Shown: piece after piece, positions 24,555-62,429 of the stretch | Numbering within the stretch: position 1 is the stretch's first letter | Layout of the letters: the number at the start of each line of letters is the position of its first letter | Source: Mytilus edulis | Lineage: Eukaryota | Direction of reading: 5' to 3' | Length of the DNA stretch: 64,000 bases | Assembly (NCBI RefSeq): GCF_963676685.1 | Contig: NC_092349.1 | Span: 54,622,001 to 54,686,000 of the forward strand | Program-made: the position numbers and the translations under genes | The notes under the pieces: generated by a model | Told to the model about the DNA's origin: nothing | Database searches by the model: none | What the model saw: only the letters and a program-made list of their open reading frames with translations

Positions 24555-26161
24555 CAGGTTGGGCTCAAGTCATGAAACATGGGGTGGTGCCAGGTTTGTG
24601 GGATGAACACGTTTTTCTGGGGTCGAAAAACCCCACAAAACTGGGGTAAAAAACTTCGTTCATAGTTTTCACATAAACTGTGAAAAACCGCACCATGTCA
24701 GCTGTTGCGGTAATCTTTATCCAACATGAACTTTTGTTTACGTTAAGTTGTTTGCCATGGCAATATTTATTCTTTTGTGTAAGTCTCAGGACAAATGGGC
24801 TTCATAACCGGAAGTGTCAACATCAAGTCATTTATCAATAATATCATATCATTTCTTTACTTTCTAGACAAATTGTCTTTCTCACTAACTTTGCCGACTG
24901 ACATTACTCCATCTTGAACAACAATGCATGAGCAGTATGAAACAAAGCTTTCTATTGGTTGATTAATCTTTTGACTTTTGTTAAATTCTATGGAGGGCAT
25001 AAATAACAGAACAATACCAAAAACTGTTTTTTCATTTTGTATCGGAGATGCTGAAATTATCTCCCTTTGCAAGAATAAAGAATGACTCAAAATGAACTAT
25101 ATTACTGTGTAAGAACATAATAATTAAGTGAAGATGTAAATAAACCAATCTTATGATGATTTAAAATATAGTTTCCAACTTACTATATATTTTATAGAAT
25201 ACTTTTGCTATTCTTATGGAAGAATTATACCTTTTAAATGAACTTGTTGAAATAGAGTTATAAAAGAAATACAAGAAAAGCTTATAATCGATCATAGAAG
25301 GGCGTTAAAGTCAGTCAAATTTGATAAAAACTTGTGTGTGTGGTTGATATACAATAAACTACATGCTGTCACATATCAATACAGATGTCAAATCCTATTA
25401 TAACAAAGAAGCATTATATACATACATTATTATAAAAGAAGAATTGTGGAGTATATAAGAATAAAAAACATGTTAATAAAATTGAGAATGGAAATGGGGA
25501 ATGTGTCAAAGAGACAACAACCCGACCAAATAAAAAAAAACAACAGCAGAAGGTCACCAACAGGTCTTCAATGTAGCGAGAAATTCCCGCAACCGGATAA
25601 CTATATTCGAAGAAAGAACAGACACAACTAAATGTTTTTATTCAATCTTTATATTATAAACTTTATATATACATTCATTACTTCTTTTGTAGTTTCTCCA
25701 AAAAGGGGTGACTGGTTACATCTCCCTTGCATGGTCGTTTACAAGCATTTTGTTATATTTCTATTATAACTCTATTTTAACAAGTTCATTTAAAAGGTAT
25801 AATTCTTCCATAAGAATAGCAAAAGTATTCNNNNNNNNNNNNNNNNNNNNNNNNNNNNNNNNNNNNNNNNNNNNNNNNNNNNNNNNNNNNNNNNNNNNNN
25901 NNNNNNNNNNNNNNNNNNNNNNNNNNNNNNGACTTACACAAAAGAATAAATATTGCCATGGCAAACAACTTAACGTAAACAAAAGTTCATGTTGGATAAA
26001 GATTACCGCAACAGCTGACATGGTGCGGTTTTTCACAGTTTATGTGAAAACTATGAACGAAGTTTTTTACCCCAGTTTTGTGGGGTTTTTCGACCCCAGA
26101 AAAACGTGTTCATCCCACAAACCTGGCATCACCCCATGTTTCATGACTTGAGCCCAACCTG
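24555..26161. mobile_element. Foldback DNA transposon with ~730-bp TIRs and 5-bp TSD, spanning the assembly gap
   Basis: 24555-24785 is the near-exact reverse complement of 25931-26161, and 25197-~25282 matches 25742-25830. TTTAT flanks both ends (24550-24554, 26162-26166). Termini CAGG...CCTG. Confidence 0.85.
25831..25930. other. Assembly gap (100 N)
   Basis: Run of N. Confidence 1.
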
Positions 26162-31498: not shown

Positions 31499-31514
31499 AC
31501 TTTCACTTTCGTTT
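31499..31514 (-). promoter_or_regulatory. ISRE / IRF-binding element upstream of the RLR gene
   Basis: ACTTTCACTTTCGTTT, read as AAACGAAAGTGAAAGT on the minus strand (GAAANNGAAA consensus). It is 1.8 kb upstream of the ATG. An acceptor at ~33262/33276 implies a 5' UTR intron. Confidence 0.6.
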
Positions 31515-33299: not shown

Positions 33300-33936
33300 A
33301 TGACCTCGATTGTTAGTTCTAGGGTTACTAATAAAACACACTATGCACGTCTTGGCCATGCTACTCAAAACCTGTTACCAAGGTTTCTACAGGAAGTATT
33401 GTTCCGTTATGAAAACCCATTGCATATATATTCCACATGCAAAGGAAATTATCAACTGTATAAATATTTCCTCAAATCGGCAGACTGGACAAAAATCAAT
33501 GAAGCGGTAACCACAGCATCATTCAGGAATTTTGATGTTCCTCTTATTTATACTATCTTACGAAATGTCCACTATACTACACTAATGCCAACTAGAAAAT
33601 GGGATGATAAAATTGACCCACTACCACATGAAACGAACACAGGGGATGACTTAGAGAGATGTCGTAGAACAAGAAATAAAATCATACACAGGGGAAACAC
33701 AGAGGTCAGTGACCAGGAATTAAAGAACTATTTTGACGAGTTTAGAGGAATTGCAGGTAGATTACAGGTTATCTGTAATAAAAAGAACAATGAATTTGTT
33801 ACGGAGTTTGAAGATCTACGAACTTGCTGTATGGACGAAGAGACAGAACGAAAATACTTGGAAGACATAAAAGAATGGCGACAGAGAAGTTTAGAGTATG
33901 AAGACCAAATTTCTCAATTAAAGGAGCACCTTGCGG
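33300..33936 (+). CDS. Exon 1 of the RLR: DZIP3/hRUL138-like HEPN domain plus coiled coil
   Basis: HYARLG...[12 protein letters not shown]...[11 protein letters not shown]....[24 protein letters not shown]...YF contains the HEPN R-N-x3-H motif (RNKIIH). Confidence 0.85.
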
Positions 33937-36900
33937 GTAAGTTTTAAAATAAATGCATCATTATGACAAAGAAACAAACACCATCTACATTGATTATTAT
34001 ATATAATTTACTTTTATTTATTGAACAGATTTGTTTTAATACAGTGTCTTGTTGTAGTGTATAAAATGTAAACACACAATCATATTATCACATCTTGTAT
34101 TAATAATATTAACAGCACACATGACTTAAAACAATTAAAAGCCAAAAAAATGGACTATTATACATTCTAATAACTTCCAAATAAAAGAATTATCAGTATT
34201 CAATGAAATTGAAAATAACTGTTACTGAATGAACATGATAATTAACAATGTTCACTTTCATATTGTGTATCCAATGATATCAAGATTGTCGGGGTACTTA
34301 AAATAATATATAATGTTTATAGTGTAAAAGGTGTCACAAACTATCCATGTAAATTGCCATAAAATGGCACTTCTTACTTATAAAAAGAAAACACCATTAA
34401 CTGTATATATAGATGACAAGTTACTACCGTTAAAAGACATTTCACTAACATAATTAAAGTTCTAAGTACTAGTTCAAACTCAGTGATCATGCTTTCGTTT
34501 TTGTTCTACAGCAATTGGTATATCGGAAAAGCAGGAAAATGAAAATGGTAAGTACATGTATAACAATTTGAATGCTCCATACCATAGGTGACTAGGTTAG
34601 TTAAAACATAGGTTGTACAATACACAAACCAAACGAGCAAATCAGAAATGTTAATACTCTTTTTATGAGGTTATGTATTGTCAGCTGAAATAATGTGAAC
34701 AGTTTTTAATCCTTTCCAACCTTGATTAAGGTTTTATTTCTTTTTTGCAACCGTATTTGAATTTTGTTAGTTTTATTTTATTCGGGGTTGTGATATATAA
34801 TAGATGAAGATTTGGTAATCCTTCGAGACCACAGGGAATGACCCACAGATTTTGGTTTGCATGGTTCATGTTTCTCAGTCTAGTTTTCTACGTTGCCTTG
34901 TCCAGCTGTATCTTAGTTTCAATATTTGAAGAAATAGACCAGAACGGATAAAGATACAAATTTTGAAACGCGTGATCTCCTGATTAGTTGTCACATAACC
35001 ATTTTGTCATCGTGAGACTGTATTTGACGTTTTATAATATGTTCTTGTGTTTTCTGTTTTAAATTGCCCATAAGGGTAGTCCGTATAATCAATTTGAAGT
35101 TATAATATGAAGTCATTTACAGGTACACAAGACATCATTTTATAATCAAAGTTTATGAATTTTAAGATAAAAAAAGTCAACATATGTTGTTTTTTTCTAT
35201 GAAGCTTTTTCTTTGTTATTTATTTTTATATTCATGTTCTTGCGTGTAAACCATTTTTGTGTATATCAATTGTGTCAAATTATATAGCCATGGCTATCAT
35301 TGTTTGTGCTTGGATTACATTTGTTTTTATTGGGGGTATTTTTTCAACGTATGATAAATGATATCCGGTACATGTAGAAAAACGTTTTATTCTGAATTAA
35401 ATTTCACCGTTACGCCCGGAACTGAAATGTATAAAAGCCAACAACAACAAGTATTTGAGAACACAAAGCTAAAATCACACGAACAGAATAGCCACAACTT
35501 TTAAAATTTAAAAGCAATATACCAACTTCACCTGCATATGGGATATTAATTTCCAACTTATTCGGTATTTAATAGCAGGCAGCTGCTAATCAGACGTAAT
35601 AAAACGTCACCACTATCTGAGCATAAAGTTGATGAACCAGGGGAATGTCAAAGAAAGTGTCGTCTTTTTTGTCTTTTTCTTAAGATACCGAGACCTTGTT
35701 GATAAATATTTGGTATCAACTTCACAATTAATATATGATTTTTTTTTATCATTTTTACCTGAGAAAATGCGTTTTTCAAACGTGTCATGACAATTTCATA
35801 ATTTAATTAACTGGCAATTCATTGATAGCATGCATCATTAAAATCGTCCCATGACCTTTGATCTGAATAATGAGTAGATTATCCTTAACGGCAGAGTCGA
35901 AATGGGGGTATGTAAAAATCGTATTCATCAAGTATCCTCAAGACCAATCATTTGACAAACGTGAACAATCTGATTTGCGGATGCACACAAAAGGAACCTT
36001 TAAGTAGTAATCGACAGCATGAACAGTGTAATGTTAACTTTTCGTCGAGGATTATTTTTACATTGTTCTATATTAACTGCCTATAGTAGACTAGATTTTT
36101 TTTATTAAATAATATTGTATACCGTTTGCAGTTGTTTTCATCAAAACTCTACAAGACACCACATGTGTTGAAGGCAATACAGTAACTTTACAATGCGTTG
36201 CTAGTGGATGTAAATATATAGCAGAATGGTCGAAGAATAACGAAGAAATTTTATACGACAGGAAAAACAGTCAGGAATGTTCCAATAACATTATCGATGG
36301 AATATATGTTCAGGTCTACAAGCACGTTATTCCAAAATCTTCATTAGAAGATAGAGGCACATATACCCTTAAACTTGGAAGTGAAACACGAAGTTGTGTG
36401 CTTTCTATCACAGGTTTGTTGAATGTGCCAGTTCATGCCCCAATGATAATATTTTGTGCATACTATCCTTAGCGAATGCATAATTGAACGATTTTATTCA
36501 CAAAAGCTCTTTAATTTTTACATTTAATTGAACAATAAAAGTTTTAAATGATAAGAACACAAAACTTAAAAGTACACTACAATAGCGTCTTTTTTTTTTT
36601 GGGGGGGGGATTAATATCATGAATCTGCTAAGTTGATTTTGTCGAAACAGTGATAACAATTCTGTACAAGGCTATCTATTTTGTTTGATAGAGCAAGCAA
36701 CTAGTTTCTTTTGCGGCGATTACATTTTTATGAATATTGAATTTGATGAAAATTACAACAAGGAATGACCTTTCGTGTTTGCACCGGAGTGTCGACATTG
36801 ATACTCCTGTGGTTGTAAAAAGGCATTAAAGATACCAGGCATACATGTATCACTTCATATGGCTGACGCCTATTTCGTAAACATAAGGCTATAAATCTGT

Positions 36901-39900
36901 GCCACTCGAATCCAAACAGTTAAAGTTAAACTGCAATAATACAGAGCAAATTGCATTTTCATCATATACAATGTACCGTATTGAAATAAAATACATTTAA
37001 ATCCATTTTTTTTTTGTCGGAAAAGCCTTTACCAATAAACTTGAGAATGTAAACGGGAAATTTGTCAAAGAGACAACAAATCGATCAAAAAACGGAAATC
37101 AACCACAGGTCGCCAAGTCAGGAATATGATAGGTTGTTTTTCTACTTTATCCGTTGATTTTGATATCATTTGGTTTCGTTCTGTCAGTTTTTATGGATTT
37201 TTTTTTTGGAGTTTGGATTTTTTTTCAGTCATGAATTATTAGAAGGAGTTATAGGAAAATTATTTAGAACATATTTTTGTTTCTATTCTGGCTTTCATAT
37301 ATATGGTATATTGACATTCAGTTACAGATAGTGAGTGAGATACCAAGAAAAAAAGTTGTACACAAAGCATAAAATTCTAGATAATGATTTGCATTTAAGC
37401 TGTCGTTTATAGAAAAAAAGATATATATCAACTTGAATGGCCAGGTCTTACAGATACTATACTGTTGTTTCTGTGAAATTGACATATGGTGTATGCGTTA
37501 GTGAGACAGCAACCAATAGGATTTCAGACAGTTTATGGTATTGCATATATATTGCTCAATACTTGCTATGCGATTTATATAAACTTATGTTTTGTTCTAT
37601 TTGGGTCAATAGAAAGGAAGCCAAGTTTAATTAAACTGCGAAAATACCAAGAAGAACTGGCTGAGATAGCTTTGACAGGTCAAAACACTATTATTTGTTC
37701 TGGAACCAATGCAGGAAAGACTTATGTTGCTTACCATATAATTGAGGATCATCTTATTAAGAACCCGGAAGGTAATGACAACAGAAAAGGTACCAATTTT
37801 TCTGCACATGATTCGCATTTTGACAAATAATGTTGCTATGGTTTGTTCAGCAATTCTCGCGGCCAACATATTTGAAAATTAAATGAGATACACTATTTTA
37901 AACAACATAAACAGTACTAATTTTTTCTACACCAGATGCGCATTTCGACGATCAATGTCTCCCTGGTCTATTCAGCAATGCTCGCGGCCAAAATATTTGA
38001 AAATTAAATGCGATACATCATTTTAAACATATCAATAATTAACAAAATAATGTTTGCGTTAGGTAATAAACAGTGTTTGAACAGGTTATGCATTTCGAAA
38101 AAATTATTAACTGTATCAGTTTTCAGTATAAATTAAAACTATGGCACATGATCACTACTATTTCTAATTAAAATTATATGTTCGCACTTGTTCATTTAAA
38201 TGCAACAAACATAAAAAAAATCTTCCTATTGTAGGTAAAGTCGTTTTTATAAACAAGACCAATGTTTTGTTAGAACAACAATACAACAGAGCATGCAAGA
38301 CTTTTAAAGATTTAAATTTTCAGGTATGAGAATGTGTATTATTAATTGATTCTGAATGGTATAAACTTGTATGAAATGCTGATTATGCTTAAAAGAATCA
38401 ATTATACATAAGTTGTGAAATAACACTTTATACACGATGGACGTTTAAACTTAAACATATGAAAGCATGAGATGTATCAAAAATTAGAAAACGTCAAAAG
38501 CTTACATGTAACGACAAAAATAAAATGGACTAAAAAGAATAGCGAATTTACATACTGACATAATTGGTGTCACTACCAAATCACTGACTATTGCGCTGGT
38601 GGTATCATCGGTGATCATTAATTCAACAGAAGTGGTATCGACTCAGTGCTTGTAAGTGAGAAAAACACTGATATAATTCAGTCAATATAAAGAATGAAAA
38701 ATCAGATTAAAAAAATCATGATATTGATCTATGTATTGAATATTATAACATGCATAATTTTGTTTAGGGAAAGATTTATAAATGGGATGCAAGTTTAGAA
38801 GGGGAATGTGAACCCTTTCCAAGTATTGTACAACGTGTATCATTACTTTTCTGTACTCCAAAATCCCTTTGTAATCACCTGGACGAAAAGTCAAAGAATA
38901 AAATTTCGATGGATACGTTCACACTGGTTGTTCTAGACGAATGTCATCATGTGATGCGAGGAAACCCATTCAACGAAGTTATGAATTACTACAGGAAACA
39001 CAAGTTTGAATCCGAGTCCGGCAAGATACCACAGGTTTGTAATAATAACTGTGGAACTGATTTTCTTAGATATATTTTTACAGAAATACTTCTAAAATGA
39101 TGATTGACAAGAATTCAAAACAAAAGAATTCCAATCAAATTGTCAGTAAATTGCATATTGAGACGAAAATGTAGGGTGGAGGTGGTAAAATGGATTAATA
39201 TGTTTTATATAAACAATAATTCACCCTAGTTACTTTTCTTTTTTTTCGTCTTTTGCAAACGCCGTAAAGAGTTATCTCCTATATCACCAGACTACTAGTT
39301 AAAGAACCATTAGGTACAAAATGTACAAGATAATACTACAATTTTTTATGGTTTATTAGTTAAATCATTAAAAAAGAGAAATAGTGAAATGATAAACCTG
39401 TTTGGTTCATTTTTGTCAAAATTATCCAAGAAACATAGCATACTAATTATTCACTTGTAAGTGAATAATTCAACCTTATTAAATTATTTTTCCTGTAACA
39501 TTCAATTTAATCCTTAGCTATATATGATTAACGCATAAGCCAGGCGTGTTCAGATATTAAAAGTTAAAGAATGCCAAAATTGAAAATGATACAAGGGGTA
39601 ACAATTTGTTTGACTGCTTAAATCTACAAAAAACATATTCTCTTACACATGTAGACACGATGATAAAAATGTTACATGAAATTAAGCAGACCTATACAAA
39701 TCCAATTAGAAGTGTCAGCTATCTAATTCAAGCTGTTAACATATCGGGTTAAATTACCGTCCGCAGTCTTTAACAGTCAATGTTAAATCAGATTGCGTCT
39801 AGACTAAAATACACATGAAATGCTGATACATACTACCGAGTATATTCAACGTGAATAGTTTATTTTAATCTTTTATAATTTGGATAACGTTTTGTTTTTA

Positions 39901-42900
39901 TATAAATTAGTATTTGAGTCAAATTGGTGTACTTGAATATGACAACTAAAAACCCTTTAACATTACAGGTATTAGGTCTTACTGCTTCCCCTGGAACGAA
40001 TAGGGCTGACGGTGGATTTTCTGCTGTCCAACATTTGAAAAGCCTGATGGCAAATATGGATGTTTTCAAGCTGTCAGTTGTCCAGAAAAATGAACAAGAA
40101 CTGTTAGAATATTCATCAACCCCATCAAAAGGTAAACATAAATTATGTGCATATATTTAAGTTTTTTAATGTCATATTATATAATTGTATTTTAATACAT
40201 GTACTTTAATGCTTTTTCTTTGAATGAATTATATTTCGTGTGTACGTTGGGGGGCTGGTTTCTTTTATGTCCAAATAAACAACACTTATGTTAGATGAAA
40301 TAGCAACATTTTTTCCAACATTTTTATGAAATCGAGTTTATAAATGACATGTATCAACTGAAACATAAAGTTATGATTATTACCAGAGATATCAAACTAA
40401 CAACAAATATTTTTTTCAATGATTCCCATGAAAAAAATGTTTGAAATTTGAAAACAAACTTCACACAAACTGTGAAGACCTTATACAAAAAAAACGTAAA
40501 GTCAAATCGAAAAAGGAATTTGGAACGAACAATCTTTAGCTCAATAGGATGATTTTTAGCCTTCATTGAAACTCTCTTATCGGCTGATCACCGATACACT
40601 CGTGTTAAACATTGTATAGATGACGCGTAACTATACCAAGAGACGCATGTGTTATTATGATTACATATAAAGGTGCAACTGTTTTCTATATTTCATATTA
40701 CTTAAGTACAAATTCGTTCAGCGGACAGGCTACACGACCCTGTTCAAGGCATCCTTCTTAAAGCCATAACACATGTTGAGGGTGTGTTTAGAAACAGGAG
40801 AGGTACGATATAGTGTAACTACTACTTTAAAGAGCTGTACAAACATGGCATCTAAAGTTGTACAGTTTAAATGCAAAATGGATATCTGCTTATTCAAATT
40901 GATTTTCTTTTGAAATGTAGATTCTTACAACTAGACTCTAGCTATTCTCTTAATAAGTAAACTGTGAATAGGAAATAATTTTGCATAATTTTTATACTTA
41001 AAACACAATAATAAATAAAACATTTTCTTTAAGGTATCAGTATACTATGTTAGATTAAAATGAATGCTTTCCGTCAACTGTATGTAATTTTTTAGTGACT
41101 TCATTTTTGATGGAAAATGGCATCGACACGAAGACTCTGTTATCTGCCCTAGGAATGCCACCGTTTGTTAAATCAGAGAAAAAATATGTACAGTGGATAA
41201 GTGAAACAAAACGAAAAACAGAAAGCGTGATGTTAAAAGATGCAGATGTACCCCGTCTTATACACCTTTGTCTTCGAATTTTAGAGGTACATTGACATGT
41301 TAAAATAAAGCTGGTCCGCATAAATATTTATTGCATATGAAAAAGAGGAAGATAACGAGTGGTAATAAATTAGCGTAAGACAAAGGAAAGAGTTAAACAA
41401 CACAGTATCTCCGAAAACGAACATCAGACAAAAACACTAAATTAATCAAACTGAGTTACACGAACCCCTCTAATATAACTGAAGGTTGTTTCATCACTAT
41501 TGAAAGTTAAGTAGTTCGTACTTAACTAGGAGAACACATACAGCAGTTATCGTGAAAACGTTAGTATACCGTCCATACAACAGAAGCAACCCAAGTGTAT
41601 GGAAATACTATAAAATACCTTGTTTATACAAGACAATACATCTTAGTAAATGATAACATTACAATAAAAATAAATATGAAAAATTATACAAGAAAAGACA
41701 CATGCAATATATATATCATACCGTAGGAACAGAACTGGGAGCAACAAGGCAGTTGCAAGCTCCTGAAACTGTTGAAGGTGGCAAACTGTTTAATGCGAAC
41801 CTAGTTTACAGCCGAAATGTGTTGGAAGTCAGTGAAAAAAATATAGAATAAGACAGTAGAAATTTAAAATCATGTACAGGTTAACTGCTGAAACAGCAAA
41901 CACACATTTTAGTTATTTGCTCTACATGTAAAACAATTTTGCGAATATTACTTTACAGGGAGATAACTCTGTAAAATCAGCTGAACGTTTTAATAACTTT
42001 TCGTTGTTAAAGGAATATAAAGCTTCTCAATGATAAAAAAAAATAGTGTGTGTCAAACTGCTATACAACTAGTGTAATTTTTCTGATAAAATGGTTGGTT
42101 CAAATTTTTGAAATTTTTATATTTTTGTCAAAGGGTCAAAGTAAATACTTTGTCAATATTTTATGAAATTAAACGAGCCAAATTGATTTTATTGAAAGTG
42201 TTAGGTACCACCTTAAACAAAAAATATGAGATGAATGTAACTTTGGTTTTTTTTTATCTTTATTTCTAATATTCAGAAGTATCCCGTGCCACCACTATAC
42301 ACATATTTGACTAAACCCAAAACTCAGTAAGGATAAGAACTGTTCATTCTCGATAATTTTATGTGAAACACTATATTGCAGTTATACGTAGAATGTCTGG
42401 AAATGAATTCATTACTTGAAATTGAAAATGTCACCGACTTGCTTACTGAGGCATATGAAATGTTTTCTTATGAAAGCCAACAAGCAAATACTATAGAAGA
42501 AAGACAAATTATAGAGGCACTAAAAGGTAAGCTTATTCTGTTAATAAAGATATATTTAAAAACGGTATGTAAACAGTATTTGGATTCTTCACCTATTATT
42601 CCTCTATATACACAACTAGCATTCACCTTTTATTCTTTAAAAATGATTGTCATACTCCATCAATTTACGAAATAAAATTTACAATGTTTTTTCAGTGTTG
42701 TATTTATTTGAAAGTTTACTATTTGTTTGATCTTATATTCTGTTTCGCGATAGCATTCACGTGTATTAAATTTTTAACGGTAATTCTTGAGTGTCAGTGT
42801 ACAAACAATTATTGGTAAAATTTTCTGGTTTTGTTGTAGATGTAACATCACTCCTTGTGGAGTTGAGGAATGAAGTTGAAGGTAACCCCGACGTTAATGA

Positions 42901-45900
42901 AATCATTAGTGCACTTCTGAAGGAATATGAAATATTGAAGGAGAATTCAAGATTTCTTGTTTTCGTTAAAACAAGAGCATCTGCGAAAGCTTTAGCAAAG
43001 AGACTACCAGAGTGTCTAAAGGCAACTCATTTAACTGGAGGAACAAAATCAAAAGATAAAGCAGGTAAAGTTGTTGTTTTAAAATAAAGTGTTTTGCTTG
43101 CTGGTTAACTTACTGGGGTTAACGCTAACAACCATTCGTCAATACGGGATATATGTCAATGTATGATATTTCGTGCATTGTTTCATTGCCCGTTTCATAC
43201 ACATCTGTTCTTAAAATGAAGAAGAACAGACAGAAAGTAGAATAGAAATGTAACATCCAAACCTGCAGATATCTATTTGACATAATACCCTTACAATCTT
43301 AGTCATGTTTTTACATAAGACGCCATTCGTTTTTACTGTTTAACAGTCGTTAACATCGATGAGAAGCTGTTTCCACTTATTGACTATTTCCATGATTGAT
43401 TAAAAACAGGAGTATACCGCCTACCCTGTGAATCTGACATTAGAACATGTAATGAATACAATTAAAGCAGAATCATGTCTATACTATATACACGACAAGC
43501 ATTAGACTTTCAAAAAGGGCTAAGTCGACAATGGAAAATGGAAAGTGCTCTCGCTTTGTAGATTTTTTCATTTACTAGAATAGCAACGTGCATCCATCAA
43601 CAAATTTTACCACACACGTGAGGTCACACGTTATGAAGTTGTATATATCGTTAACGTTGCTGTTTACCGAACTCCAGAAGATTAGACTATTTATAGATAA
43701 AAGTTACCTGTGTACCAATATCATGAATATGCATGATTAATGACCAGGCAAAATCTAATTGCTACAATAGAGAGGACAAATCCGATACTCTACGGGATTG
43801 AAGGACATTTACTAGGTTTGGATTGTCCTAACCAATCAATAAACTTTGATTATTCACGTCTCGTAATATCTTCCAATCAGGTAGCAAGAAAAATTCACGC
43901 ACTGACTGTCCATCGTTCAATTCTTAATATCGACTCCTAGAAGTCGATAATTATACTTACTTTGCAGGAAAACAAATGAGCTTAATCAATGCATGTTAAC
44001 TTTCAGGCCTTCACACCGATGAACAACTTGAAGTTATGGAACGTTTTAGAGAAGGAGAACATTTGTGCATCGTTGCAACGTCTGTTGCATGCGAAGGACT
44101 TGACATCCCACAATGCAATTTGATGATCAGATACAAATTTAGAGTAGATGAAATTAGTAGCTATCAAATGAGAGGTAATATTTAAAATTCTGTATACTAA
44201 AGAGTTTGACTAAAGCGTACACCTAATTGAGCATTGAATTGATAGATGCATTACATGTTTTATTATCAAACTAAGACAAATGGATTTTAAAATTCACAAG
44301 CAGCTACTTAAAATAATAATACGCCTAACAAAAACAAACTGAAAATCTAAAAAAGCAAAGGTGACTTCACATACTATATAAAAATAATGTTCACCGGAAC
44401 GAAAAGCACTGAATAATATCATAGTTTCATAGTTACAACTGAAAGCAGGAATTTTCAGATATGAATAAAATTTAAATTTCATAATAGAATAAAAATAACA
44501 TAAACAAATGTGTTTATTTAATTAATTTTGTATTAATTTACAATTAAATGTCAGGATAAATTCAGTCAGTTTGGTTTTACTTTCGTTTCCGGATGATCTG
44601 TTGAATTCATTGTATTGGCAATCTTAATTTGACACGTAAAACAAGATTTAGGGTCTCTTTGTCTAATTTCAACGTCCAAACTACTTACAGCGTTGTGCAG
44701 TTCTATAGATCTGAGTGTCGGGTATGCGTCTGGATGTTGGTCCATCATTTCTGTATTCTATATTTTTTAGGCAACTTTTCTCTGTTTCTAATACCTTTTG
44801 CCCATTTTTCTGTTTTCTTTATACTTTTTGCCCATTATACTCTATTCCTTATTTTTGAGGGTTCATTATTATCTATTCTTTACATTCATTTGTAAAACTT
44901 CATAGTACTGCACCTTACTACCATATCTTGTCAAATAATATAAGAGGAATATCCAAATTGATTTGGAAACCATTTGGTCGAAAGTCCTCGTCAAAATTAT
45001 CGATTACTTTAAGATATGATTTATGCAAACAAGACTTGTTGGAAATGTTTACATGACCTGGTCCTTTATATTCGAATTTTATTTCGAGTTTTAGCCAGGG
45101 ATAAAAATAACGAATAAAACGCCCAAGCCAAATGAAAATGATAACACATCTATGGGCCGCATGAATTATTTCGATTCTAATAACACAACAACGATATTAA
45201 AAAACAACTAGAAAATATGTATTCAATCCTTTGGATTCTGAACGCAATGTTTTTTCGTTGGCTTTTATTTACAGTCAAATGTACGTATATGAAGTAAATA
45301 GTTGACTTGCAGCCATGTTGACTTGTTGAAACCAAATGAATGTATGAATTCACATAACATTGAAAAAGTCAACAGTTCTATACCACTTTTTGAAATTCAT
45401 AAATCGATTAAGAAAAATCAAATCCGGGTTACAAACCAAACCTGAGGGAAACACATCAAATATAAAGGGAGAACAACGAAACAACAGAAACATTAAAATT
45501 CAACACACACAGAAACGAACTATAAGATAACAATAGCCATCTTCCTGATGAAAAATGAACGTAACGGAATGATCTTCAGCTTGGGGTATTATTTTGTTTT
45601 GACATTACATGAACCCGCTTTTCATATTTTAGGAATATAATTTTACCTTGATTTTATACAATTTTTGAGATCTTATGCAATAATTCTTTTCATGCCGTAT
45701 TTATGGGCATTATGTTTTCTTGTCTGTGCGTCTGTTTGTTTGTTCGTTCGTCCGTTCGTTCCGCTTCAGGTTAAAGTTTTTGGACGAGGTAGTTTTTGAT
45801 GAAGTTGAAGCCCAATCAACTTGAAACTTAGTATATATGTTTCCTATGATATGATCTTTCTACTTTTAACGCCAAATTAGAGTTTTGACCCAAATTGCAT

Positions 45901-47096
45901 GGTCCACTGAACATAGAAAATGATAGTGCAAGTTTCAGGTTAAAGTTTTTGGTCAAGGTAGTTTTTGATGAAGTTGAAGTCCAATCAACTTGAAACTTAG
46001 TTCCCTATGATATAATCTGTCAAATTAGAAATGTTATCCCATTTTCAGGGTTTACTGAACATAGAAAATAATGGTGCATATGGGGCATCCGTGTACTTGG
46101 TACACATTCTTGTTTGTTATGCATTAGAATAGGAACAACGGTTCTGTAGTTACTTTTTCAATTTCAAGTTGAACACAACGAAATCCACTAAGTTTTTGCA
46201 CAAAGCTTACGATACAAGTGGATTGACGTGGAAAGTAAATAATGATAGCCATATGTATTTACACATCTGAGTCTGTGATAAGTATATACGTATCGAGAAT
46301 TTTATCACGTTTACATAGCAAAACAAACATGTCATACTAAAATTGGACACAACATCCTGCAAAGATTTCAAAATGGTTGTAATTCATATAAATGATTTTT
46401 TAAAACTCAAGTCAGAATTTTTAGGAGTGATAATTTTCTTTTATTTTTTACTCGAATGACGTGCTTAACATAATAGTATTTTATTTTCAATTATTAGGAA
46501 GGATTAGAGACAAAAAAGGAAAGGAGGTCATTTTGGCGTCAACTGAAGATTTTGAAAGGGAAACAAAAAATATATTAAGACAATACTACATGAAGGAAGC
46601 CATTGGACAAGTAATTGACCTTGATCTAACTGCACATATAGCAATAGCAGAACGAGGGATATATGCTTCCGAAGTTCAGGAACGACTACTCCAACAGCGT
46701 CAAGCGGACAGTAAAACAATTGGTGCATTCACAGTTAATTGCAAGTTCTGCGGAAAACCAGTAACTGATGGTCAATACATCAGGCACATTAAAAGGAAAA
46801 TCTTTATAGTATATGACAAAACAATTTTGACAAAAATAAGACGCGAACCTCTAAAAAAGATAACAAAATTTGACACGATAAAGAAAACGGAAAGAGTATT
46901 TGGGAATATTTGTGGTCACAGTTGGGGTGTAATACTTGTGTATCAGCAATGTGACTTCTTAGCAATATCAAAGGATAAAGTAAATTTTTTTGATAAATAT
47001 TCAAAAGATTTGGTAAAATTTAAGAAATGGCCTGAATTCCCTTATCGCATTGACGAAGTCTCGGATGAAGAGGTGCAGCGTTATTTGGCACAATGA
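33300..47096 (+). CDS. RIG-I-like receptor helicase with N-terminal HEPN (DZIP3-like) and Ig domains, no CARD; 13 exons, ~1018 aa
   Basis: Exons 33300-33936, 34512-34547, 36132-36413, 37613-37771, 38235-38323, 38768-39034, 39969-40131, 40707-40802, 41096-41286, 42382-42526, 42840-43064, 44007-44174, 46498-47096 total 3057 nt, all GT-AG, with no stops. Motifs: LRKYQEELA (Q), GTNAGKT (I), DECHH (II), LGLTAS (III), FVKTR (IV), [16 protein letters not shown] (V), QMRGRIR (VI), and CTD CKFC...CGHSWG...FKKW. Confidence 0.9.
36132..36413 (+). CDS. Exon 3 of the RLR: I-set immunoglobulin domain (absent from the ORF track)
   Basis: [25 protein letters not shown]....EWSKNNEEI...[18 protein letters not shown]...CVLSIT in a 282-nt phase 1-1 exon. 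Confidence 0.85.
45688..46113. mobile_element. HINE copy (181-bp-core family) in the last RLR intron
   Basis: Homologous to 28425-29250, with ~2 core units. Confidence 0.75.
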
Positions 47097-51610: not shown

Positions 51611-51722
51611 ACAGAATATTCGTCTCACAATAATGTTCCAAATATTCTAACTACGATACCGCCCCTTTCCCCAATTTTGACATTCCGAATAAAAATTGTT
51701 ACTTGTTAACAATACAAACAAT

Positions 51723-54669
51723 TTTTGACTCACTAGAATGGACTTTCATGACGGAAACACTGAAACGGTTTGGATTTAAAAGTAGCTTTATCAGATGGGT
51801 TGAAACTATGTATAACGACATTAAGGGATGTATCTTAAATAATGGGTGGGTCTCAGGTCCGTTCAAAATATATCGAGGAATACGACAAGGGTGTCCGATT
51901 TCAGCGTTACTTTTTGTTATAACAGTAGAATTAATGGCAATAAGACTTAGAAGTAATAAAGACTTTAAAGGTATAAAAATTACATTAGATGGAAAATCTT
52001 GTAATTTAAAAATTTGTCAATTAGCTGACGATACAACACTTTTTCTTCAGTCAAGGAAAGAAATAAGTTTAGCTCTCAGTATAATTAAAACCTTTGGAAG
52101 TTTTTCAGGACTTAAGCTTAATAGAAATAAAACGGAAGGGGTATGGTTAGGACGACTAAAAAGTTCAAAAGATAAATATGAAAATATAAATTGGACCGAC
52201 AAACCAATCAAAAGCCTTGGAATATATTTTGGGTATGACAAAAAAGAGTGTCAAACATTAAATATTGAAAAAGTGTTGGACAAATTAACGAAACTTGTAG
52301 AAAGATGGGCAAAAAGAAAGTTAACACTACTTGGAAAAATATTAGTAGTAAAAGCTCTTCTTCTACCAAATATAACCTACATTGCTGCTAACAGTATCAT
52401 TACTAAAGAAAATCTACAAAATATAAATAAAATCTTATATAAATTCATTTGGAATGGAGGAAAAGATAAAATAAAAAGGTCAATAATAACAAAAAACTTC
52501 GCAGAAGGGGGGTTAAAAATGATTGATATAGAATCCTATATAAAATCTATACATTTAAAATGGATTATAAAAATATTAGAATCAGAAAATGCAAATTGGT
52601 CTGTATTATCAAAACTATACCTTAACAAGTTCGGAAAAAACCTTCTTATTTTCAAGATGAATGTAAATAACACAAAATTGCTAGATAAAAACATATAGAA
52701 CAGTACACCAACCTTCTCTCAAGAGATGATAAAAACATGGATAAATGTAAATAATTGTGAAAACAATCATCATGATCAAATCGATAATTATTTAGAAATC
52801 AGAAAACAAGTTATATGGGGAAATAAATTCATAAAATTTCAAGGAAAATGTTTGTTCTTTGATAACTGGATTGATAGTAACATACTATATATAAATGACA
52901 TAATAGATAAAAGAGGAAATATATCAGAAGAAATGATTACTTCAAAATTAAGAAATAAAAGGAATTGGATTTCTGAATACTCAAAACTAAACAAATCTAT
53001 ACCAAAGCAATGGACAGACAAATTAAAATCAGAAGAATCATTCAAAACAAAAGTCCACATCAACCGAACAAAAACTAAACTAAGAGATTGTAATGATGTT
53101 CTAACTATTAATGCTAAAAACATATACAATTTAGTATTAAGTGTGTCAAAAACAGAAATACCAATAGGATTTTTGAAATGGGAAAGAGTCTTAAGCAAAG
53201 GGAGACTAATAAATGAATTTAAAGACTCTATTAAATTTAATTTTGAATATCTTAAAGATAATAAAATAAAAATGTTAAGGTGGAAATTAATGCACTTTAT
53301 TTTGCCAAATGAGGTACTGCTTTTTCAGTGGAAAATTTCACAAAACAATTTGTGTTCATATTGCAATGAAATGGATAATTATAATCATTTTTTCATTACA
53401 TGTTCATATCATAAAACATTCTGGAAATCAATGAAAGTTTTACTCAAAAAAGTCTTCATAGGCGAACATGTAATAAGTCTTCATTCGTTGGTTATAGGAT
53501 ACAAAATTCATGACGATGCATATTATGCGCTAAATCATTTGCTTAGCTTAATGTTCTTTTCAATCTATAAAACACATTATGTTTCCAATAAAAAAACCAA
53601 AGCAGTAGACACATTAAAAAATTTTGAATATGAGGTAGAAAATACTGTAGAACTATATAGTATGACCAATATAGAGATCAGCAGTTTATTAACAAAGGTG
53701 TTGAATATTTTGAAGAATAATAATGAAGTCATTTTATAGTTAACTTAAGCTACATGTATAAAAAAAAAACAGATTCTATAGATCTAGATTATGTGTGATT
53801 GTATGTGATTTTTTCCCCTTTATTATAAATGTACTATACAAGTAATTATCTATAATTGCCATTCCTAAAGTATGAGTATGTATGAAAGTTATTGAAAGAA
53901 ATTTGTTTGTAAAATGTATCATGTGACACTGAACAAGTACGACTGTATGTGCAGAAGTTTGTTTGTTCAGTAATTATTACTGCAATGTATGAATGTTAAT
54001 GTGGGTAATTCAGATATAAATGAATATGTAGGTGTGTGTGTGTGTGTGTGTCTTTGTCAATATATAGGTATTTCGACACTTGTACGCTACATCTGTATGC
54101 ATTGTTTACAAAATTTGTCAGGTAAAGGTCACGACACGGTATTTATCTGGGTCAAATCAATAACAAATTTAATAAAGTGCAACTATGAAAAATATATTTA
54201 CACTCCAACTTACCTTTTCGCAATATTATTCAAAGCTTTTAAAACCACATAGAAATTAATAATCCAAATTCTCGAAACACTTCAAAAAATATTGTCCCAA
54301 CACGAGGAACAGAAAAGTCGTGTGAGGTCACTTGACCGCAATTCGTTTTTGATTAGTTAATAAAAGAACCCAAAAAGTCATTCCGGATGAATGATCAATT
54401 TCCGTAAAAATATTATTGTGTAGATATTTGTTTATGAATATATCAAAAAATACTTTTTGTGAAGATGCAAAGACTATTTGTAACAACTATAATAATAGTT
54501 TAATATGTGAATTAAACCAATGTAATTTATTAGTTAATTTTACTGAATATTATCCCTGGGTATTCAGTGGTAATTTAACAGGGAAACTTGATGAAATGCT
54601 GTACACCAAGTTTAATTGTTAAACAGCAATATGTGCAATAAAGAATCAATTATAGTGTTAAAAAAACAA
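51723..54669 (+). mobile_element. 5'-truncated L1/Tx1-clade LINE (RT plus CCHC finger, 3' UTR, A-tail)
   Basis: ORFs 51703-52698 and 52726-53739 are in the same frame, separated by one TAG. Motifs GIRQGCPISALLF, QLADDTT, SLGIYF and CSYC..D...HFF.TC. AATAAA at ~54637 is followed by an A-rich tail. TSD AACAATACAAACAAT at 51708-51722 and 54670-54684. Confidence 0.92.
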
Positions 54670-60315: not shown

Positions 60316-62429
60316 ACAAAAAGCACCTGAACATTACTTAAGCTGAGATCATAAACATGACTAGTTACATGTACATGTAGGAATGAAATAGAGTTTACAA
60401 ATTGGTATGGTTTTGACAAGAAATGTATCTTCCAGGCTTAACCTTCATTTTATCAAAATTTTTACTAGAAATTATTTCTATAAGAATGTATGTCATTTTG
60501 ATATTCTGCAATAACTCAAAATGGATAGACTGTCATGACTCTAATGAAAATAAGGCCAAATAAAAATGACTCTAATGAAAATAAGGCCAAATAAAATTTT
60601 ATTTAGACTGTCATTTGCTTACCACTAGAACTTTATTAATTATGTATTTATAATACACATTTATTGTTTCAAATTATCATTTTGGCACTGAGAAAACAGG
60701 AGGGGAAGGGAATGAGGATTTAGAACTTCAATTTTATTAAGCCTTACTACATTTTACTTGTTATACATTTGTTATACTAAGAATTGTCACTCAAATCAAT
60801 CATCAACAGACTGATGACTTTGGCTACATGATACAATATGTGGAACCATATTCTCTTTATAGAATTCAATAAGCTTTTGTTCCATATTCTCCCAATACAA
60901 TTTGTCAAATTTTACTTCAACTGTGAGAAAATCATTCAAAAGGTAAATTACCAAATCACAATTCTCATATTTACAAATTCCCATTTGTCCTTGTATTTGA
61001 GAAAAATACTTGTGGGATTTTTTCAATTGCATATTGTTTTGTTCATCAATTTCAAGGAAAAAATCTTTGCTTGCACATGCCTCTCTGATTGTTTTCATTC
61101 TCCATTTCCATGGACATTTTATCTCTAGTACACATTTTTCCTCACCAAGCTTTGTGCACTTTTTAACAAGTCCATCAGGACTAGCACCAAGAAATCCAAA
61201 TTTGTCACATAAGAATATACCACATTCTTTTACAAAAAATTTTTCACCATATTTTAATCTTCTGTGAGCAATATATTTTTTTCTTGCTATCGGTTCATGC
61301 TTTCGTCCCCAAATTAATGGTGCCACATTGATTATCTTACCCGGCTTAGAAAAAGATTGCACTAATTTATCGACATCTGCTTTTTGCGTGAAACAATAGA
61401 GTGAAAATTTGAACTTGTTATTCTAAATTTTCTGGTATCAAACCAAAGTTGATTTTCAGATTGACCTAATGTTCTTTTTTCTATCTCATCAATTACTGTC
61501 TGAGGAATATTCACAAATTTGTCGAGCAGTATGGTCTCATTAATGGTTGGTTCTTTTTGAACAATTGACATAATGTCTATGTAGCTGTCAGATTCAAAGT
61601 GTAAATATTCAGAGGTCTCAACTTCTTCAAAATTAACTACATTTATGTCACTATTAATGTCATAAACTTCACAACTTGGGGCAACTAAATCAAAAATTGC
61701 TGGAGAATAATTCAAATTTCCTAATTTAGCTGTTAATAGTGATAAAAAATCCTGACCTTGGTCAGTAATGGATTTTTTCACAGTAAATTTATTTTTCTTT
61801 ACATTTGCACATGGTTCATTTCCACCATATTTTAACTTTTTGAAAGATATGTTTAGGACTTCTTGAGGATCTTTTTTCCTTTTACCTCCCTTATTCCAAT
61901 TACATGGTTTTGAAGTACATGCAGTATTTTCTTTTTCCTGTGCACATGCCTCAAGCTTGAAGAGAAGACCTGCGATATGGGTTCATCCTTCAACTAGGCT
62001 GAAAATAGAAATCAGAGTTATTGTTCATTTTAGAAGAAATGACAAGGGCAGTTAAGAGTCAGTAAAATCACAAACTGGTTTGAAGTTGAACAATAATGGT
62101 TTAAACCACCAGCAAGCTAAACTTTAACAACATTGTGTTTTGAATGGAAAGTTGTCTCATTGGCACTCATACCACATTTTCTTATTTATATTATGATTTT
62201 TGTAGCTCGCCTGACCATAAGGATAATGTGAGTAACATTAATGATTTTTGTTTGCTTTCACAATCACATGACCCCCCCCCCCCCCCCCCCTTTCCCTTTA
62301 AATCATGTATGTTTAACATGTCACTTGCATGTATTACATATTTCTTTTATCATGTCTTAATTTTTCATAAATTTAATTATCTGTTCATATTTTTCATTAT
62401 TTGGTATATATATGTATGGATTCATATAT

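What the first reader, a model, noticed from the sequence alone, without database searches (positions are those of the whole stretch)
33300..47096. HEPN-Ig-RLR fusion: a RIG-I-like dsRNA sensor whose CARDs are replaced by a putative HEPN ribonuclease
Seen: 13 phase-compatible GT-AG exons splice into one stop-free 1018-aa ORF, ordered HEPN (RNKIIH) - coiled coil - Ig - SF2 helicase (motifs Q, I-VI) - pincer - RLR CTD, with no CARD. Established: RIG-I and MDA5 signal to MAVS through CARDs after oligomerising on dsRNA. HEPN domains (Cas13, Csm6/Csx1, and the related KEN domain of RNase L/Ire1) are RNases whose composite active site forms on dimerisation of two R-x4-6-H motifs. DZIP3-like HEPN domains are expanded in invertebrate immune-type proteins. 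Inference: binding or filament formation on viral dsRNA could dimerise the HEPNs and trigger RNA cleavage directly, giving a MAVS-independent one-component OAS/RNase L-like or Cas13-like system in a bivalve. I recall non-CARD N-termini being reported for lophotrochozoan RLRs, but I know of no characterised HEPN-RLR. Novelty needs a literature and database check.
Basis: partly seen in the sequence, partly recalled or inferred. Interest (0 to 1): 0.95.

Follow-up and report, generated by a model that had tools for sequence, protein, structure and literature searches.

The report
Mussel RIG-I-like receptor with HEPN head
This is a real, intact mussel gene for a RIG-I-like viral-RNA sensor that carries a predicted RNA-cutting HEPN domain plus one Ig domain where vertebrate receptors carry CARDs; the gene family is already in databases and was published as "Ig-type" receptors, but its HEPN domain has gone unremarked and untested.

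Summary
13 GT-AG exons (33300-47096, + strand) are each stop-free and phase-compatible, and add up to 3057 nt (1018 codons). The order is DZIP3-like HEPN (RNKIIH), long helix, 12-codon micro-exon, I-set Ig, complete RLR helicase, RIG-I C-terminal domain. There is no CARD.

The genome is Mytilus edulis. Three paralogues on another chromosome keep the same exons, borders and phases. RefSeq annotates them as single 1014-1017 aa "RIG-I-like/DHX58-like" proteins. The same architecture occurs in M. californianus, M. galloprovincialis and M. coruscus.

The HEPN exon is under purifying selection (dN/dS about 0.26), and its R-N-x3-H motif is invariant in 18 sequences. Exons 2-5 have no in-frame Met, so they need the HEPN exon as a start.

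The M. coruscus members are McoRLR12/14 of a 2022 paper that calls them "IG-type" RLRs and never mentions HEPN. No searchable paper describes a HEPN-RLR.

RNase activity and RNA-triggered activation are still inference. No RNA reads could be reached. Two species' annotations also hold a HEPN-only model.

Verdict: a real fusion, a new variant of a known kind, moderately high interest.

The parts
33300..33936 (+). Exon 1: start codon, DZIP3-like HEPN domain, then a long C-terminal helix. It ends at donor CGG|gtaagt in phase 1.
   Evidence: Pfam HEPN_DZIP3 E 1.5e-13. AF2 model pLDDT 92.8, all-helical. The donor and its phase are conserved in 3 paralogues.
33672..33689 (+). HEPN R-x4-H motif, RNKIIH (R125, N126, H130).
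   Evidence: Located. R, N and H are invariant in 18 Mytilus sequences and at least 90% conserved in 60 wider homologues.
33831..33833 (+). Internal Met (CC-M-DEE) in the helix part of exon 1. It is the possible start of a HEPN-less isoform.
   Evidence: The M. trossulus RefSeq model P0204 (852 aa) starts at the equivalent Met.
34512..34547 (+). Exon 2: 36-nt linker micro-exon, phase 1-1.
   Evidence: Consensus acceptor and donor. Counterparts lie between the HEPN and Ig exons in paralogues A and B. It is present in RefSeq proteins.
36132..36413 (+). Exon 3: one I-set Ig domain, a symmetric phase 1-1 exon. The F-strand Cys is replaced by Leu, so there is no disulphide.
   Evidence: Pfam I-set E 8.6e-7, above cut-off. 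Four own-genome copies, all between a HEPN exon and RLR exons. Cys positions.
37613..37771 (+). Exon 4: helicase Q motif and motif I (GTNAGKT).
   Evidence: Pfam DEAD/ResIII N-terminus. 85-92% identical to paralogues. Motifs.
38235..38323 (+). Exon 5: motif Ia.
   Evidence: 90-93% identical to paralogues A and B. Motif.
38768..39034 (+). Exon 6: motifs Ib and II (DECH).
   Evidence: Pfam ResIII E 9.5e-6..
39969..40131 (+). Exon 7: motif III (TASP).
   Evidence: Colinear tblastn with P0002, P0194 and P0196..
40707..40802 (+). Exon 8: start of the Hel2i insertion domain.
   Evidence: Acceptor 40707 was chosen because paralogues keep the AG at the same place. A weaker alternative at 40722 would give 1013 aa.
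41096..41286 (+). Exon 9: Hel2i.
   Evidence: 73-79% identical to paralogues. Paralogue proteins hit Pfam RIG-I_C over this region.
42382..42526 (+). Exon 10: Hel2i.
42840..43064 (+). Exon 11: Hel2 start, motif IV.
   Evidence: Pfam Helicase_C, weak..
44007..44174 (+). Exon 12: motif V and the first part of motif VI.
   Evidence: Pfam Helicase_C E 2e-11. 91-96% identical to paralogues.
46498..47096 (+). Exon 13: end of motif VI, pincer region, RIG-I C-terminal RNA-binding domain, stop codon at 47094-47096.
   Evidence: Pfam RIG-I_C-RD E 1.1e-14. Aligns to duck RIG-I and MDA5 CTDs. CxxC at 46740-46751 and CxH at 46911-46919.

Best explanation
This is one intact gene on Mytilus edulis chromosome-scale contig C6. 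It encodes a cytosolic 1018-aa member of a Mytilus-specific clade of RIG-I-like receptors. The C-terminal 700 residues are a complete RLR RNA-sensing engine: Hel1, Hel2i, Hel2, pincer and CTD, with all ATPase motifs intact. The N-terminus, where RIG-I and MDA5 have tandem CARDs and other mussel RLRs have a Death domain, holds a DZIP3-like HEPN domain with an intact R-N-x3-H ribonuclease-type motif, a roughly 30-residue helix, a short linker and one disulphide-less I-set Ig domain. Shown here: the gene structure, the domain identities, conservation of the arrangement in four paralogues and at least four species, and purifying selection on the HEPN exon. Inferred: the HEPN domain is the output module. 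RNA binding by the helicase and CTD, with the resulting conformational change or side-by-side assembly on RNA, brings or releases HEPN domains so that two R-x4-H motifs form an active RNase site. That site would cut viral and/or host RNA directly, without a CARD-MAVS relay. My odds: single fused gene about 0.9; HEPN acts as a catalytic RNase about 0.45-0.5; RNA-induced proximity is the switch about 0.35.
For: Gene structure. There are 13 GT-AG, phase-compatible, stop-free exons. Exons 2-5 contain no in-frame Met, so the Ig and helicase N-terminal exons need the upstream phase-1 exon with an ATG. The exon 1 donor is a consensus site, CGG|gtaagt.

Conservation. Three paralogous loci on C9 keep HEPN, micro-exon, Ig, nine helicase exons and CTD in order, on one strand, with the same borders.

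Annotation. RefSeq proteins XP_071130630.1, XP_071130631.1 and XP_071130636.1 (M. edulis, C9) and models from M. californianus, M. galloprovincialis and M. coruscus carry HEPN_DZIP3 + I-set + DEAD + RIG-I_C + Helicase_C + RIG-I_C-RD in 1014-1030 aa. They align colinearly to the window at 75-80% identity.

Selection. dN/dS between the window and paralogues A and B is 0.25-0.27 for HEPN, 0.17-0.26 for Ig, 0.11-0.15 for the helicase and 0.12-0.21 for the CTD, at dS about 0.65-0.70.

HEPN identity. Pfam hit above cut-off. RNxxxH is invariant. The AF2 model has pLDDT 92.8, and its best structural neighbour is the HEPN domain of Csm6 (4rgp_B, Z 8.0, rmsd 3.3 A, 114 residues). Roquin, LsoA, sacsin-HEPN, RnlA, AbiF and HepS are also listed.

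RLR identity. Paralogue P0196 residues 325-1010 align in one stretch to duck RIG-I (E 4.7e-63), MDA5 and LGP2.

RNA support in a sister species. PMC8998645 states that its N-terminal-specific RLR models, including McoRLR14 (= P0194) and McoRLR12 (= P0002), were checked by transcriptome read mapping and are expressed in gut or haemocytes.
Against: No RNA reads for this locus or species could be obtained, so the exon 1-2-3-4 junctions are supported only by homology, annotation and sequence logic.

No database protein corresponds to the C6 copy itself. Its only near-identical model is a 215-aa HEPN-only read-through ORF from M. galloprovincialis (P0151, 98%). M. trossulus RefSeq also has a 216-aa HEPN-only model, plus an 852-aa RLR model that starts at the internal Met of exon 1.

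No DZIP3-like HEPN domain has been shown to be an RNase in any paper I could search.

The structural match is in the range that helical bundles reach by chance, and Foldseek found nothing.

Nothing here speaks to RNA-dependent activation.
Confidence: 0.5

Rival explanations
1. The same single gene, but the HEPN domain is not a nuclease output. It would serve as a homotypic or adaptor module, taking the role that CARD or Death domains play. It would couple the RNA-bound receptor to some of the more than 100 other HEPN_DZIP3 proteins of the mussel (HEPN-STAND-ankyrin, HEPN-TIR and others). Alternatively it would be an auxiliary RNA-binding or autoinhibitory domain.
For: HEPN_DZIP3 sits in the N-terminal 'effector/adaptor' position of many bivalve and cnidarian NLR-like proteins (PMC9646362, PMC8260672, PMC8662601). 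The closest non-RLR relatives of this HEPN exon are HEPN-nSTAND3-ankyrin proteins. The genome holds at least 106 HEPN_DZIP3 matches. These exons usually end in a phase-1 donor, like an interchangeable cassette. RNase activity of this HEPN family is undocumented.
Against: R, N and H of the catalytic-type motif are invariant across all 18 Mytilus sequences aligned (RLR-linked models plus the HEPN-only and divergent ones), despite 50-70% overall divergence. A pure scaffold would not need that. No HEPN-HEPN heterotypic signalling has been shown anywhere.
Confidence: 0.3
2. Two transcription units, or a mainly HEPN-less product. The HEPN exon would be expressed as a roughly 215-aa stand-alone protein (read-through to the TAA at 33945-33947). 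The RLR would be made from an internal or alternative start, such as the Met at 33831, giving a helix-Ig-RLR protein.
For: HEPN-only models exist: P0151 (M. galloprovincialis, 215 aa, 98% identical) and XP_063446948.1 (M. trossulus, 216 aa). XP_063444871.1 (852 aa) begins at the internal Met.
Against: Even the 852-aa model uses the exon 1 donor, so the exon is spliced to the RLR exons. Exons 2-5 have no Met. Most RefSeq models in three species, and all three M. edulis paralogues, are fused. The arrangement, donor and phase have been kept through dS of about 0.65 or more, and in the most diverged paralogue at 54% identity.
Confidence: 0.08
3. The C6 copy in this window is a silent or dispensable duplicate. 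It would be subject to presence/absence variation or be recently inactivated, even though the family is functional.
For: No full-length database protein matches this locus, whereas the three C9 paralogues of the same assembly have RefSeq proteins. The gene is dispersed away from the tandem C9 cluster and sits near transposon remnants.
Against: All 13 exons are open, all splice sites are intact and all motifs are present. dN/dS is well below 1. A 98%-identical HEPN exon exists in M. galloprovincialis.
Confidence: 0.12

Closest known systems
'IG-type' (L4) lophotrochozoan RLRs, e.g. Mytilus coruscus McoRLR12 (CAC5409074.1), McoRLR14 (CAC5414135.1) and McoRLR5 (PMC8998645, Int J Mol Sci 2022)
   Same: This is the same gene family. 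P0002 and P0194 are these proteins. P0194 is 78% identical to the window gene over 12 colinear exon hits, all but the micro-exon. The paper reports expression in gut and haemocytes.
   Different: The paper annotated domains with SMART and lists only the Ig domain. The word HEPN does not occur in it. The window gene is a further paralogue, on C6 of M. edulis, with no database protein.
Vertebrate RIG-I, MDA5 and LGP2
   Same: Complete Hel1-Hel2i-Hel2-pincer-CTD engine with all helicase motifs. A paralogue aligns end to end with duck RIG-I (E 4.7e-63), MDA5 and LGP2.
   Different: No CARDs. HEPN, a helix and an Ig domain take their place. The third zinc-binding Cys of the CTD is Gly, as in all Mytilus RLRs. 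The clade lies outside the RIG-I and MDA5/LGP2 groups in the quick tree.
HEPN_DZIP3-NACHT and HEPN_DZIP3-nSTAND3-ankyrin NLR-like proteins of bivalves and cnidarians (PMC9646362, PMC8260672, PMC8662601, PMC3710099)
   Same: An N-terminal DZIP3-like HEPN with an Rx4H motif, placed in front of a nucleotide-driven sensor or switch. These are the nearest sequence relatives of this HEPN exon.
   Different: The sensor here is an SF2 RNA helicase with a defined ligand class (RNA), not a STAND NTPase with repeats.
Crassostrea gigas HEPN-Ig-DED-TRADD-N proteins (Kaur et al. 2021, PMC8195603)
   Same: The same N-terminal module order, HEPN followed by immunoglobulin domain(s), on an immune-type protein of a bivalve.
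   Different: The C-terminal parts are DED/TRADD-N with WD40 or cGAS-like domains, not an RLR. That paper mentions RLR modules only with TRADD-N in cnidarians and brachiopods.
OAS/RNase L, Ire1 (KEN domain), type III CRISPR Csm6 and Cas13
   Same: Functional analogy only: a nucleic-acid signal switches on a HEPN-type RNase whose site is formed by two R-x4-6-H motifs. Csm6 HEPN is the best structural neighbour of the model.
   Different: No homology outside the HEPN fold. Here sensor and presumed nuclease are one polypeptide with no second messenger or guide RNA. Activation is undemonstrated.

Membership tests
RIG-I-like receptors (RLR) | SF2 DExD/H helicase core with motifs Q, I, Ia, Ib, II, III, IV, V and VI | tested here: met
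   All motifs were located in exons 4-13. Pfam DEAD/ResIII and Helicase_C hits.
RIG-I-like receptors (RLR) | Hel2i insertion domain and pincer between or after the RecA domains | tested here: inconclusive
   Window exons 8-10 give no Pfam hit when searched singly. Paralogue proteins, 73-79% identical in these exons, hit Pfam RIG-I_C above cut-off (P0002 and P0309). P0196 aligns unbroken to RIG-I 248-928. The joined window protein was not searched, by rule.
RIG-I-like receptors (RLR) | C-terminal RNA-binding domain (RIG-I_C-RD) with a four-ligand zinc site | tested here: inconclusive
   The domain is present at 55 bits against a cut-off of 25.6. CxxC and the fourth Cys are kept, but the third Cys is Gly in every Mytilus RLR. 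A conserved His two residues after the last Cys could substitute.
RIG-I-like receptors (RLR) | Tandem N-terminal CARDs (RIG-I/MDA5 subtype only; LGP2 lacks them) | tested here: not met
   No CARD or Death hit in any exon or in full-length paralogues. The N-terminus is fully accounted for by HEPN, helix, linker and Ig.
RIG-I-like receptors (RLR) | dsRNA or 5'-ppp RNA binding and RNA-dependent ATPase activity | not testable with these tools
   Needs biochemistry.
HEPN superfamily, DZIP3/hRUL138-like family (PF18738) | Profile match above the curated threshold | tested here: met
   E 1.5e-13, 51.2 bits against 27. Paralogues score 47.8-54 bits.
HEPN superfamily, DZIP3/hRUL138-like family (PF18738) | R-x4-6-H motif, typically with N/D/H after the Arg | tested here: met
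   R125-N-K-I-I-H130. Invariant in 18 Mytilus sequences and at least 90% conserved in 60 homologues.
HEPN superfamily, DZIP3/hRUL138-like family (PF18738) | All-alpha HEPN fold | tested here: inconclusive
   The AF2 model is all-helical, pLDDT 92.8. The VIA-align top hit is Csm6 HEPN (Z 8.0), with six other HEPN proteins at Z 5.4-7.0. By the tool's own note these Z values are within the noise range of helical bundles, and Foldseek found nothing.
HEPN superfamily, DZIP3/hRUL138-like family (PF18738) | Metal-independent endoribonuclease activity from a dimeric composite site | not testable with these tools
   No experimental report for this HEPN family was found.
Immunoglobulin I-set domain | Profile match above threshold; B-F strand Cys pair | tested here: met
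   I-set 29.4 bits against 23.7. The B-strand Cys is present and the F-strand Cys is replaced by Leu, which fits a cytosolic, disulphide-free Ig domain.

The most novel reading that the evidence does not exclude
Mussel HEPN-Ig-RLRs are one-polypeptide sensor-effector enzymes. Binding of viral double-stranded RNA by the RLR engine directly switches on the N-terminal HEPN RNase. This would give an animal antiviral arm that needs neither MAVS-type signalling nor a second messenger. Functionally it would be an RNase L-like or Cas13-like response built on a RIG-I chassis.
Probability: 0.3. Interest if true: 0.85.

Novelty: new variant of a known kind. Interest (0 to 1): 0.62.

Why it matters
RLRs are the textbook example of a sensor that only signals, by CARD-MAVS polymerisation. 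A conserved, selected RLR clade whose signalling module is replaced by a nuclease-type domain would show that animals also wired this sensor directly to an effector. Bacterial defence systems do this, and so do invertebrate NLR-like proteins with HEPN heads.

The idea is directly testable, because the ligand class (RNA) and the candidate catalytic residues (R125, H130) are known. It would also give the first biochemical handle on the DZIP3-like HEPN family. That family is hugely expanded, with more than 100 exons in this genome, and has no demonstrated activity.

The finding also corrects the published description of 'IG-type' mollusc RLRs, which missed a 210-residue N-terminal domain.

Tried and rejected
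The neighbourhoods of the HEPN-only models in M. trossulus and M. galloprovincialis could not be inspected.
3. Joined spliced protein. It was not built or searched. Everything was done exon by exon by reference, by arithmetic on exon lengths, and with database proteins of paralogues.
4. Complex prediction on two copies of the exon 1 protein returned 'no answer' (score 0.00). This is no evidence for or against HEPN dimerisation.
5. Foldseek against the PDB with the HEPN model gave no match at E <= 0.001.
6. A database protein for the window's own locus was not found in three protein searches.
7. HEPN-RLR outside Mytilus. Among the best 150 representatives of a 1.84-billion-protein HMMER search, only two Mytilus proteins combine this HEPN with an RLR helicase. 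Other mytilids could not be examined, because the genome collections on hand hold no other animals.
8. Literature. Five searches combining HEPN or DZIP3 with RLR, RIG-I, helicase, bivalve or RNase terms found no description of a HEPN-RLR and no RNase assay of a DZIP3-like HEPN.
9. The careful tree did not finish. Only the quick tree is reported. It includes the N-terminal columns, which may inflate support for the HEPN-Ig clade.

Full report
**What is there.** Between 33300 and 47096 on the + strand lie 13 stop-free coding stretches, each flanked by AG...GT. I enumerated every GT/AG pair compatible with the reading frames. I then fixed ambiguous borders by what three paralogues keep. The exons are 33300-33936, 34512-34547, 36132-36413, 37613-37771, 38235-38323, 38768-39034, 39969-40131, 40707-40802, 41096-41286, 42382-42526, 42840-43064, 44007-44174 and 46498-47096. 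The lengths sum to 3057 nt, which is 1018 codons plus a stop. The phases fit, and no split codon is a stop. Each exon was searched by reference, and full-length comparisons used database proteins of paralogues.

**Domain content, exon by exon.**
- Exon 1 hits Pfam HEPN_DZIP3 (E 1.5e-13, above the curated cut-off) and carries RNKIIH at 33672-33689.
- Exon 3 hits I-set Ig (above cut-off).
- Exons 4-13 carry helicase motifs Q, I, Ia, Ib, II (DECH), III, IV, V and VI.
- Exon 13 hits RIG-I_C-RD (E 1.1e-14).
- No CARD or Death domain is present.

**One gene or two?** This was the main risk, because the exon 1 ORF reads through to a stop nine bases into the intron. That gives a 215-aa stand-alone ORF, and some annotations call such models. 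P0151 of M. galloprovincialis is 98% identical, and XP_063446948.1 of M. trossulus is similar. Five points argue for one gene.
1. Exons 2, 3, 4 and 5 have no in-frame Met, and exon 6 has its first Met only just before motif II. Without exon 1 the Ig domain and the ATP-binding site have no start codon.
2. Exon 1 ends in a consensus donor in phase 1, which matches the phase 1-1 micro-exon and the phase 1-1 Ig exon.
3. The own-genome search found three more loci on contig C9 (HEPN exons at 60.457, 60.485 and 60.582 Mb). Each has HEPN exon, Ig exon, nine helicase exons and CTD exon in the same order and strand, with the same borders and phases. Identities range from 90% down to about 40%.
4. Contig C9 has exactly the length of the record that carries RefSeq proteins XP_071130630.1, XP_071130631.1 and XP_071130636.1 of Mytilus edulis. 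The genome is therefore M. edulis, and its annotators fused these paralogues into 1014-1017 aa proteins. All six Pfam domains are present in them. M. californianus, M. galloprovincialis and M. coruscus have the same models. They align colinearly to the window at 75-80% identity.
5. Even the 852-aa M. trossulus model, which lacks HEPN, starts at the internal Met of exon 1 and therefore uses the exon 1 donor.

I could not obtain direct RNA evidence. Indirect RNA support comes from PMC8998645. Its authors state that their N-terminal-specific RLR models were corrected by transcriptome read mapping, and they report expression.

**Is the HEPN exon functional?** Against paralogues A and B (dS about 0.65-0.70), dN/dS is 0.25-0.27 for HEPN. 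That is similar to the Ig exon (0.17-0.26) and not far from the CTD (0.12-0.21) and the helicase (0.11-0.15). In an alignment of 18 Mytilus sequences the block around the motif is nearly identical, and R, N and H are invariant. In 60 wider homologues they are at least 90% conserved. An AlphaFold model from that alignment is confident (pLDDT 92.8) and all-helical, ending in a long helix at residues 180-211. Foldseek found no PDB match. The exhaustive aligner put the HEPN domain of Csm6 first (Z 8.0, rmsd 3.3 A, 114 residues). It also listed Roquin, LsoA, sacsin HEPN, RnlA, AbiF and HepS. The tool warns that such Z values are within reach of unrelated helical bundles. HEPN membership therefore rests mainly on the profile match and the motif.

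**The RLR part.** Paralogue P0196 aligns in one stretch (residues 325-1010) to duck RIG-I (E 4.7e-63), and almost as well to MDA5 and LGP2. A quick tree places all HEPN-Ig RLRs in one clade (SH-aLRT 99). That clade sits beside N-terminus-less and Death-domain Mytilus RLRs, and away from vertebrate RIG-I and MDA5. The careful search did not finish, and N-terminal columns were included. One oddity: the third zinc-ligand Cys of the CTD is Gly in every Mytilus RLR examined, while a His two residues after the last Cys is conserved.

**What is already known.**
- P0002 is CAC5409074.1, which is McoRLR12. P0194 is CAC5414135.1, which is McoRLR14. Both appear in PMC8998645, which classes them as lophotrochozoan 'IG-type' RLRs. 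That study used SMART and never mentions HEPN.
- HEPN_DZIP3 at the N-terminus of NLR-like proteins is well documented in pearl oyster, cnidarians and others.
- A HEPN-Ig N-terminal module joined to DED-TRADD-N has been noted in C. gigas.
- The 2013 HEPN survey lists fusions of this family to TPR, RING, ankyrin, CARD, NACHT, Death and LRR, but not to a helicase.
- Five literature searches found no HEPN-RLR description and no RNase assay for this HEPN family.
- Among the 150 best representatives of a HMMER search of 1.84 billion proteins, only two Mytilus proteins join this HEPN to an RLR helicase.

So the genes are in the databases, with the Pfam hit precomputed. The combination has not been discussed, and its function is unknown.

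**Mechanism.** I commit to the HEPN domain being the receptor's output: an RNase turned on when the helicase and CTD bind RNA and protomers come together. The invariant catalytic-type residues favour this over a pure scaffold. The main rival is that HEPN is a homotypic adaptor or an RNA-binding or autoinhibitory module. That rival stays strong, because no member of this HEPN family has a demonstrated activity. The family also behaves like an interchangeable N-terminal cassette: more than 100 exons in this genome, mostly ending in phase-1 donors. A homodimer prediction gave no verdict and is not evidence either way.

**Verdict.** The architecture reading is supported, the mechanism is open, and the novelty is moderate. 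I score this a new variant of a known kind, interest 0.62.

Noticed in passing
window 46740-46751 and 46911-46919; proteins P0188-P0214: Every Mytilus RLR CTD examined (HEPN-Ig type, Death type and N-terminus-less type) has Gly where other animals have the third zinc-binding Cys. All of them keep CxxC...CxH. This suggests either a Cys3-His zinc site or loss of one ligand in the whole mussel clade.
   Followed up: partly
window 31499-31514: ACTTTCACTTTC reads GAAAGTGAAAGT on the other strand, an ISRE/IRF-type element about 1.8 kb upstream of the start codon. I only looked at the sequence. No enrichment or conservation test was done.
   Followed up: partly
protein P0205 (M. trossulus XP model, 1312 aa), residues 1-500: An Ig-RLR of the same clade carries a different, longer N-terminal region with its own RNFLAH motif and only a sub-threshold HEPN_DZIP3 hit (E 0.0015). 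P0208 of M. coruscus is similar. HEPN heads on these RLRs may have been swapped more than once.
   Followed up: partly
G000 C9:60465880-60466023 (locus L018), donor after exon 10 of paralogue A: The donor reads G|gcaagt, a GC-AG intron, where the window and the other paralogues have GT.
   Followed up: no
window 51703-53739 (+): Two adjacent ORFs with Pfam RVT_1 (E 1.5e-20) and zf-RVT (E 1.5e-7): a remnant of a non-LTR retrotransposon downstream of the gene.
   Followed up: partly
window 60796-61781 (-): Two abutting ORFs with YqaJ-like recombinase / viral alkaline exonuclease hits (E 1.4e-12 and 2.9e-5). The coding region appears split between two frames, which suggests a transposon- or virus-derived exonuclease gene that may be broken.
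   Followed up: no
window 25831-25930: A run of 100 N (assembly gap or masked stretch). I left it untouched.
   Followed up: no
G000 genome-wide; loci L005-L012: There are at least 106 HEPN_DZIP3-like exon matches in this genome. Most are open, about 200-260 codons long, and end in a strong phase-1 donor just after the domain, like an exon-shuffling cassette.
   Followed up: partly
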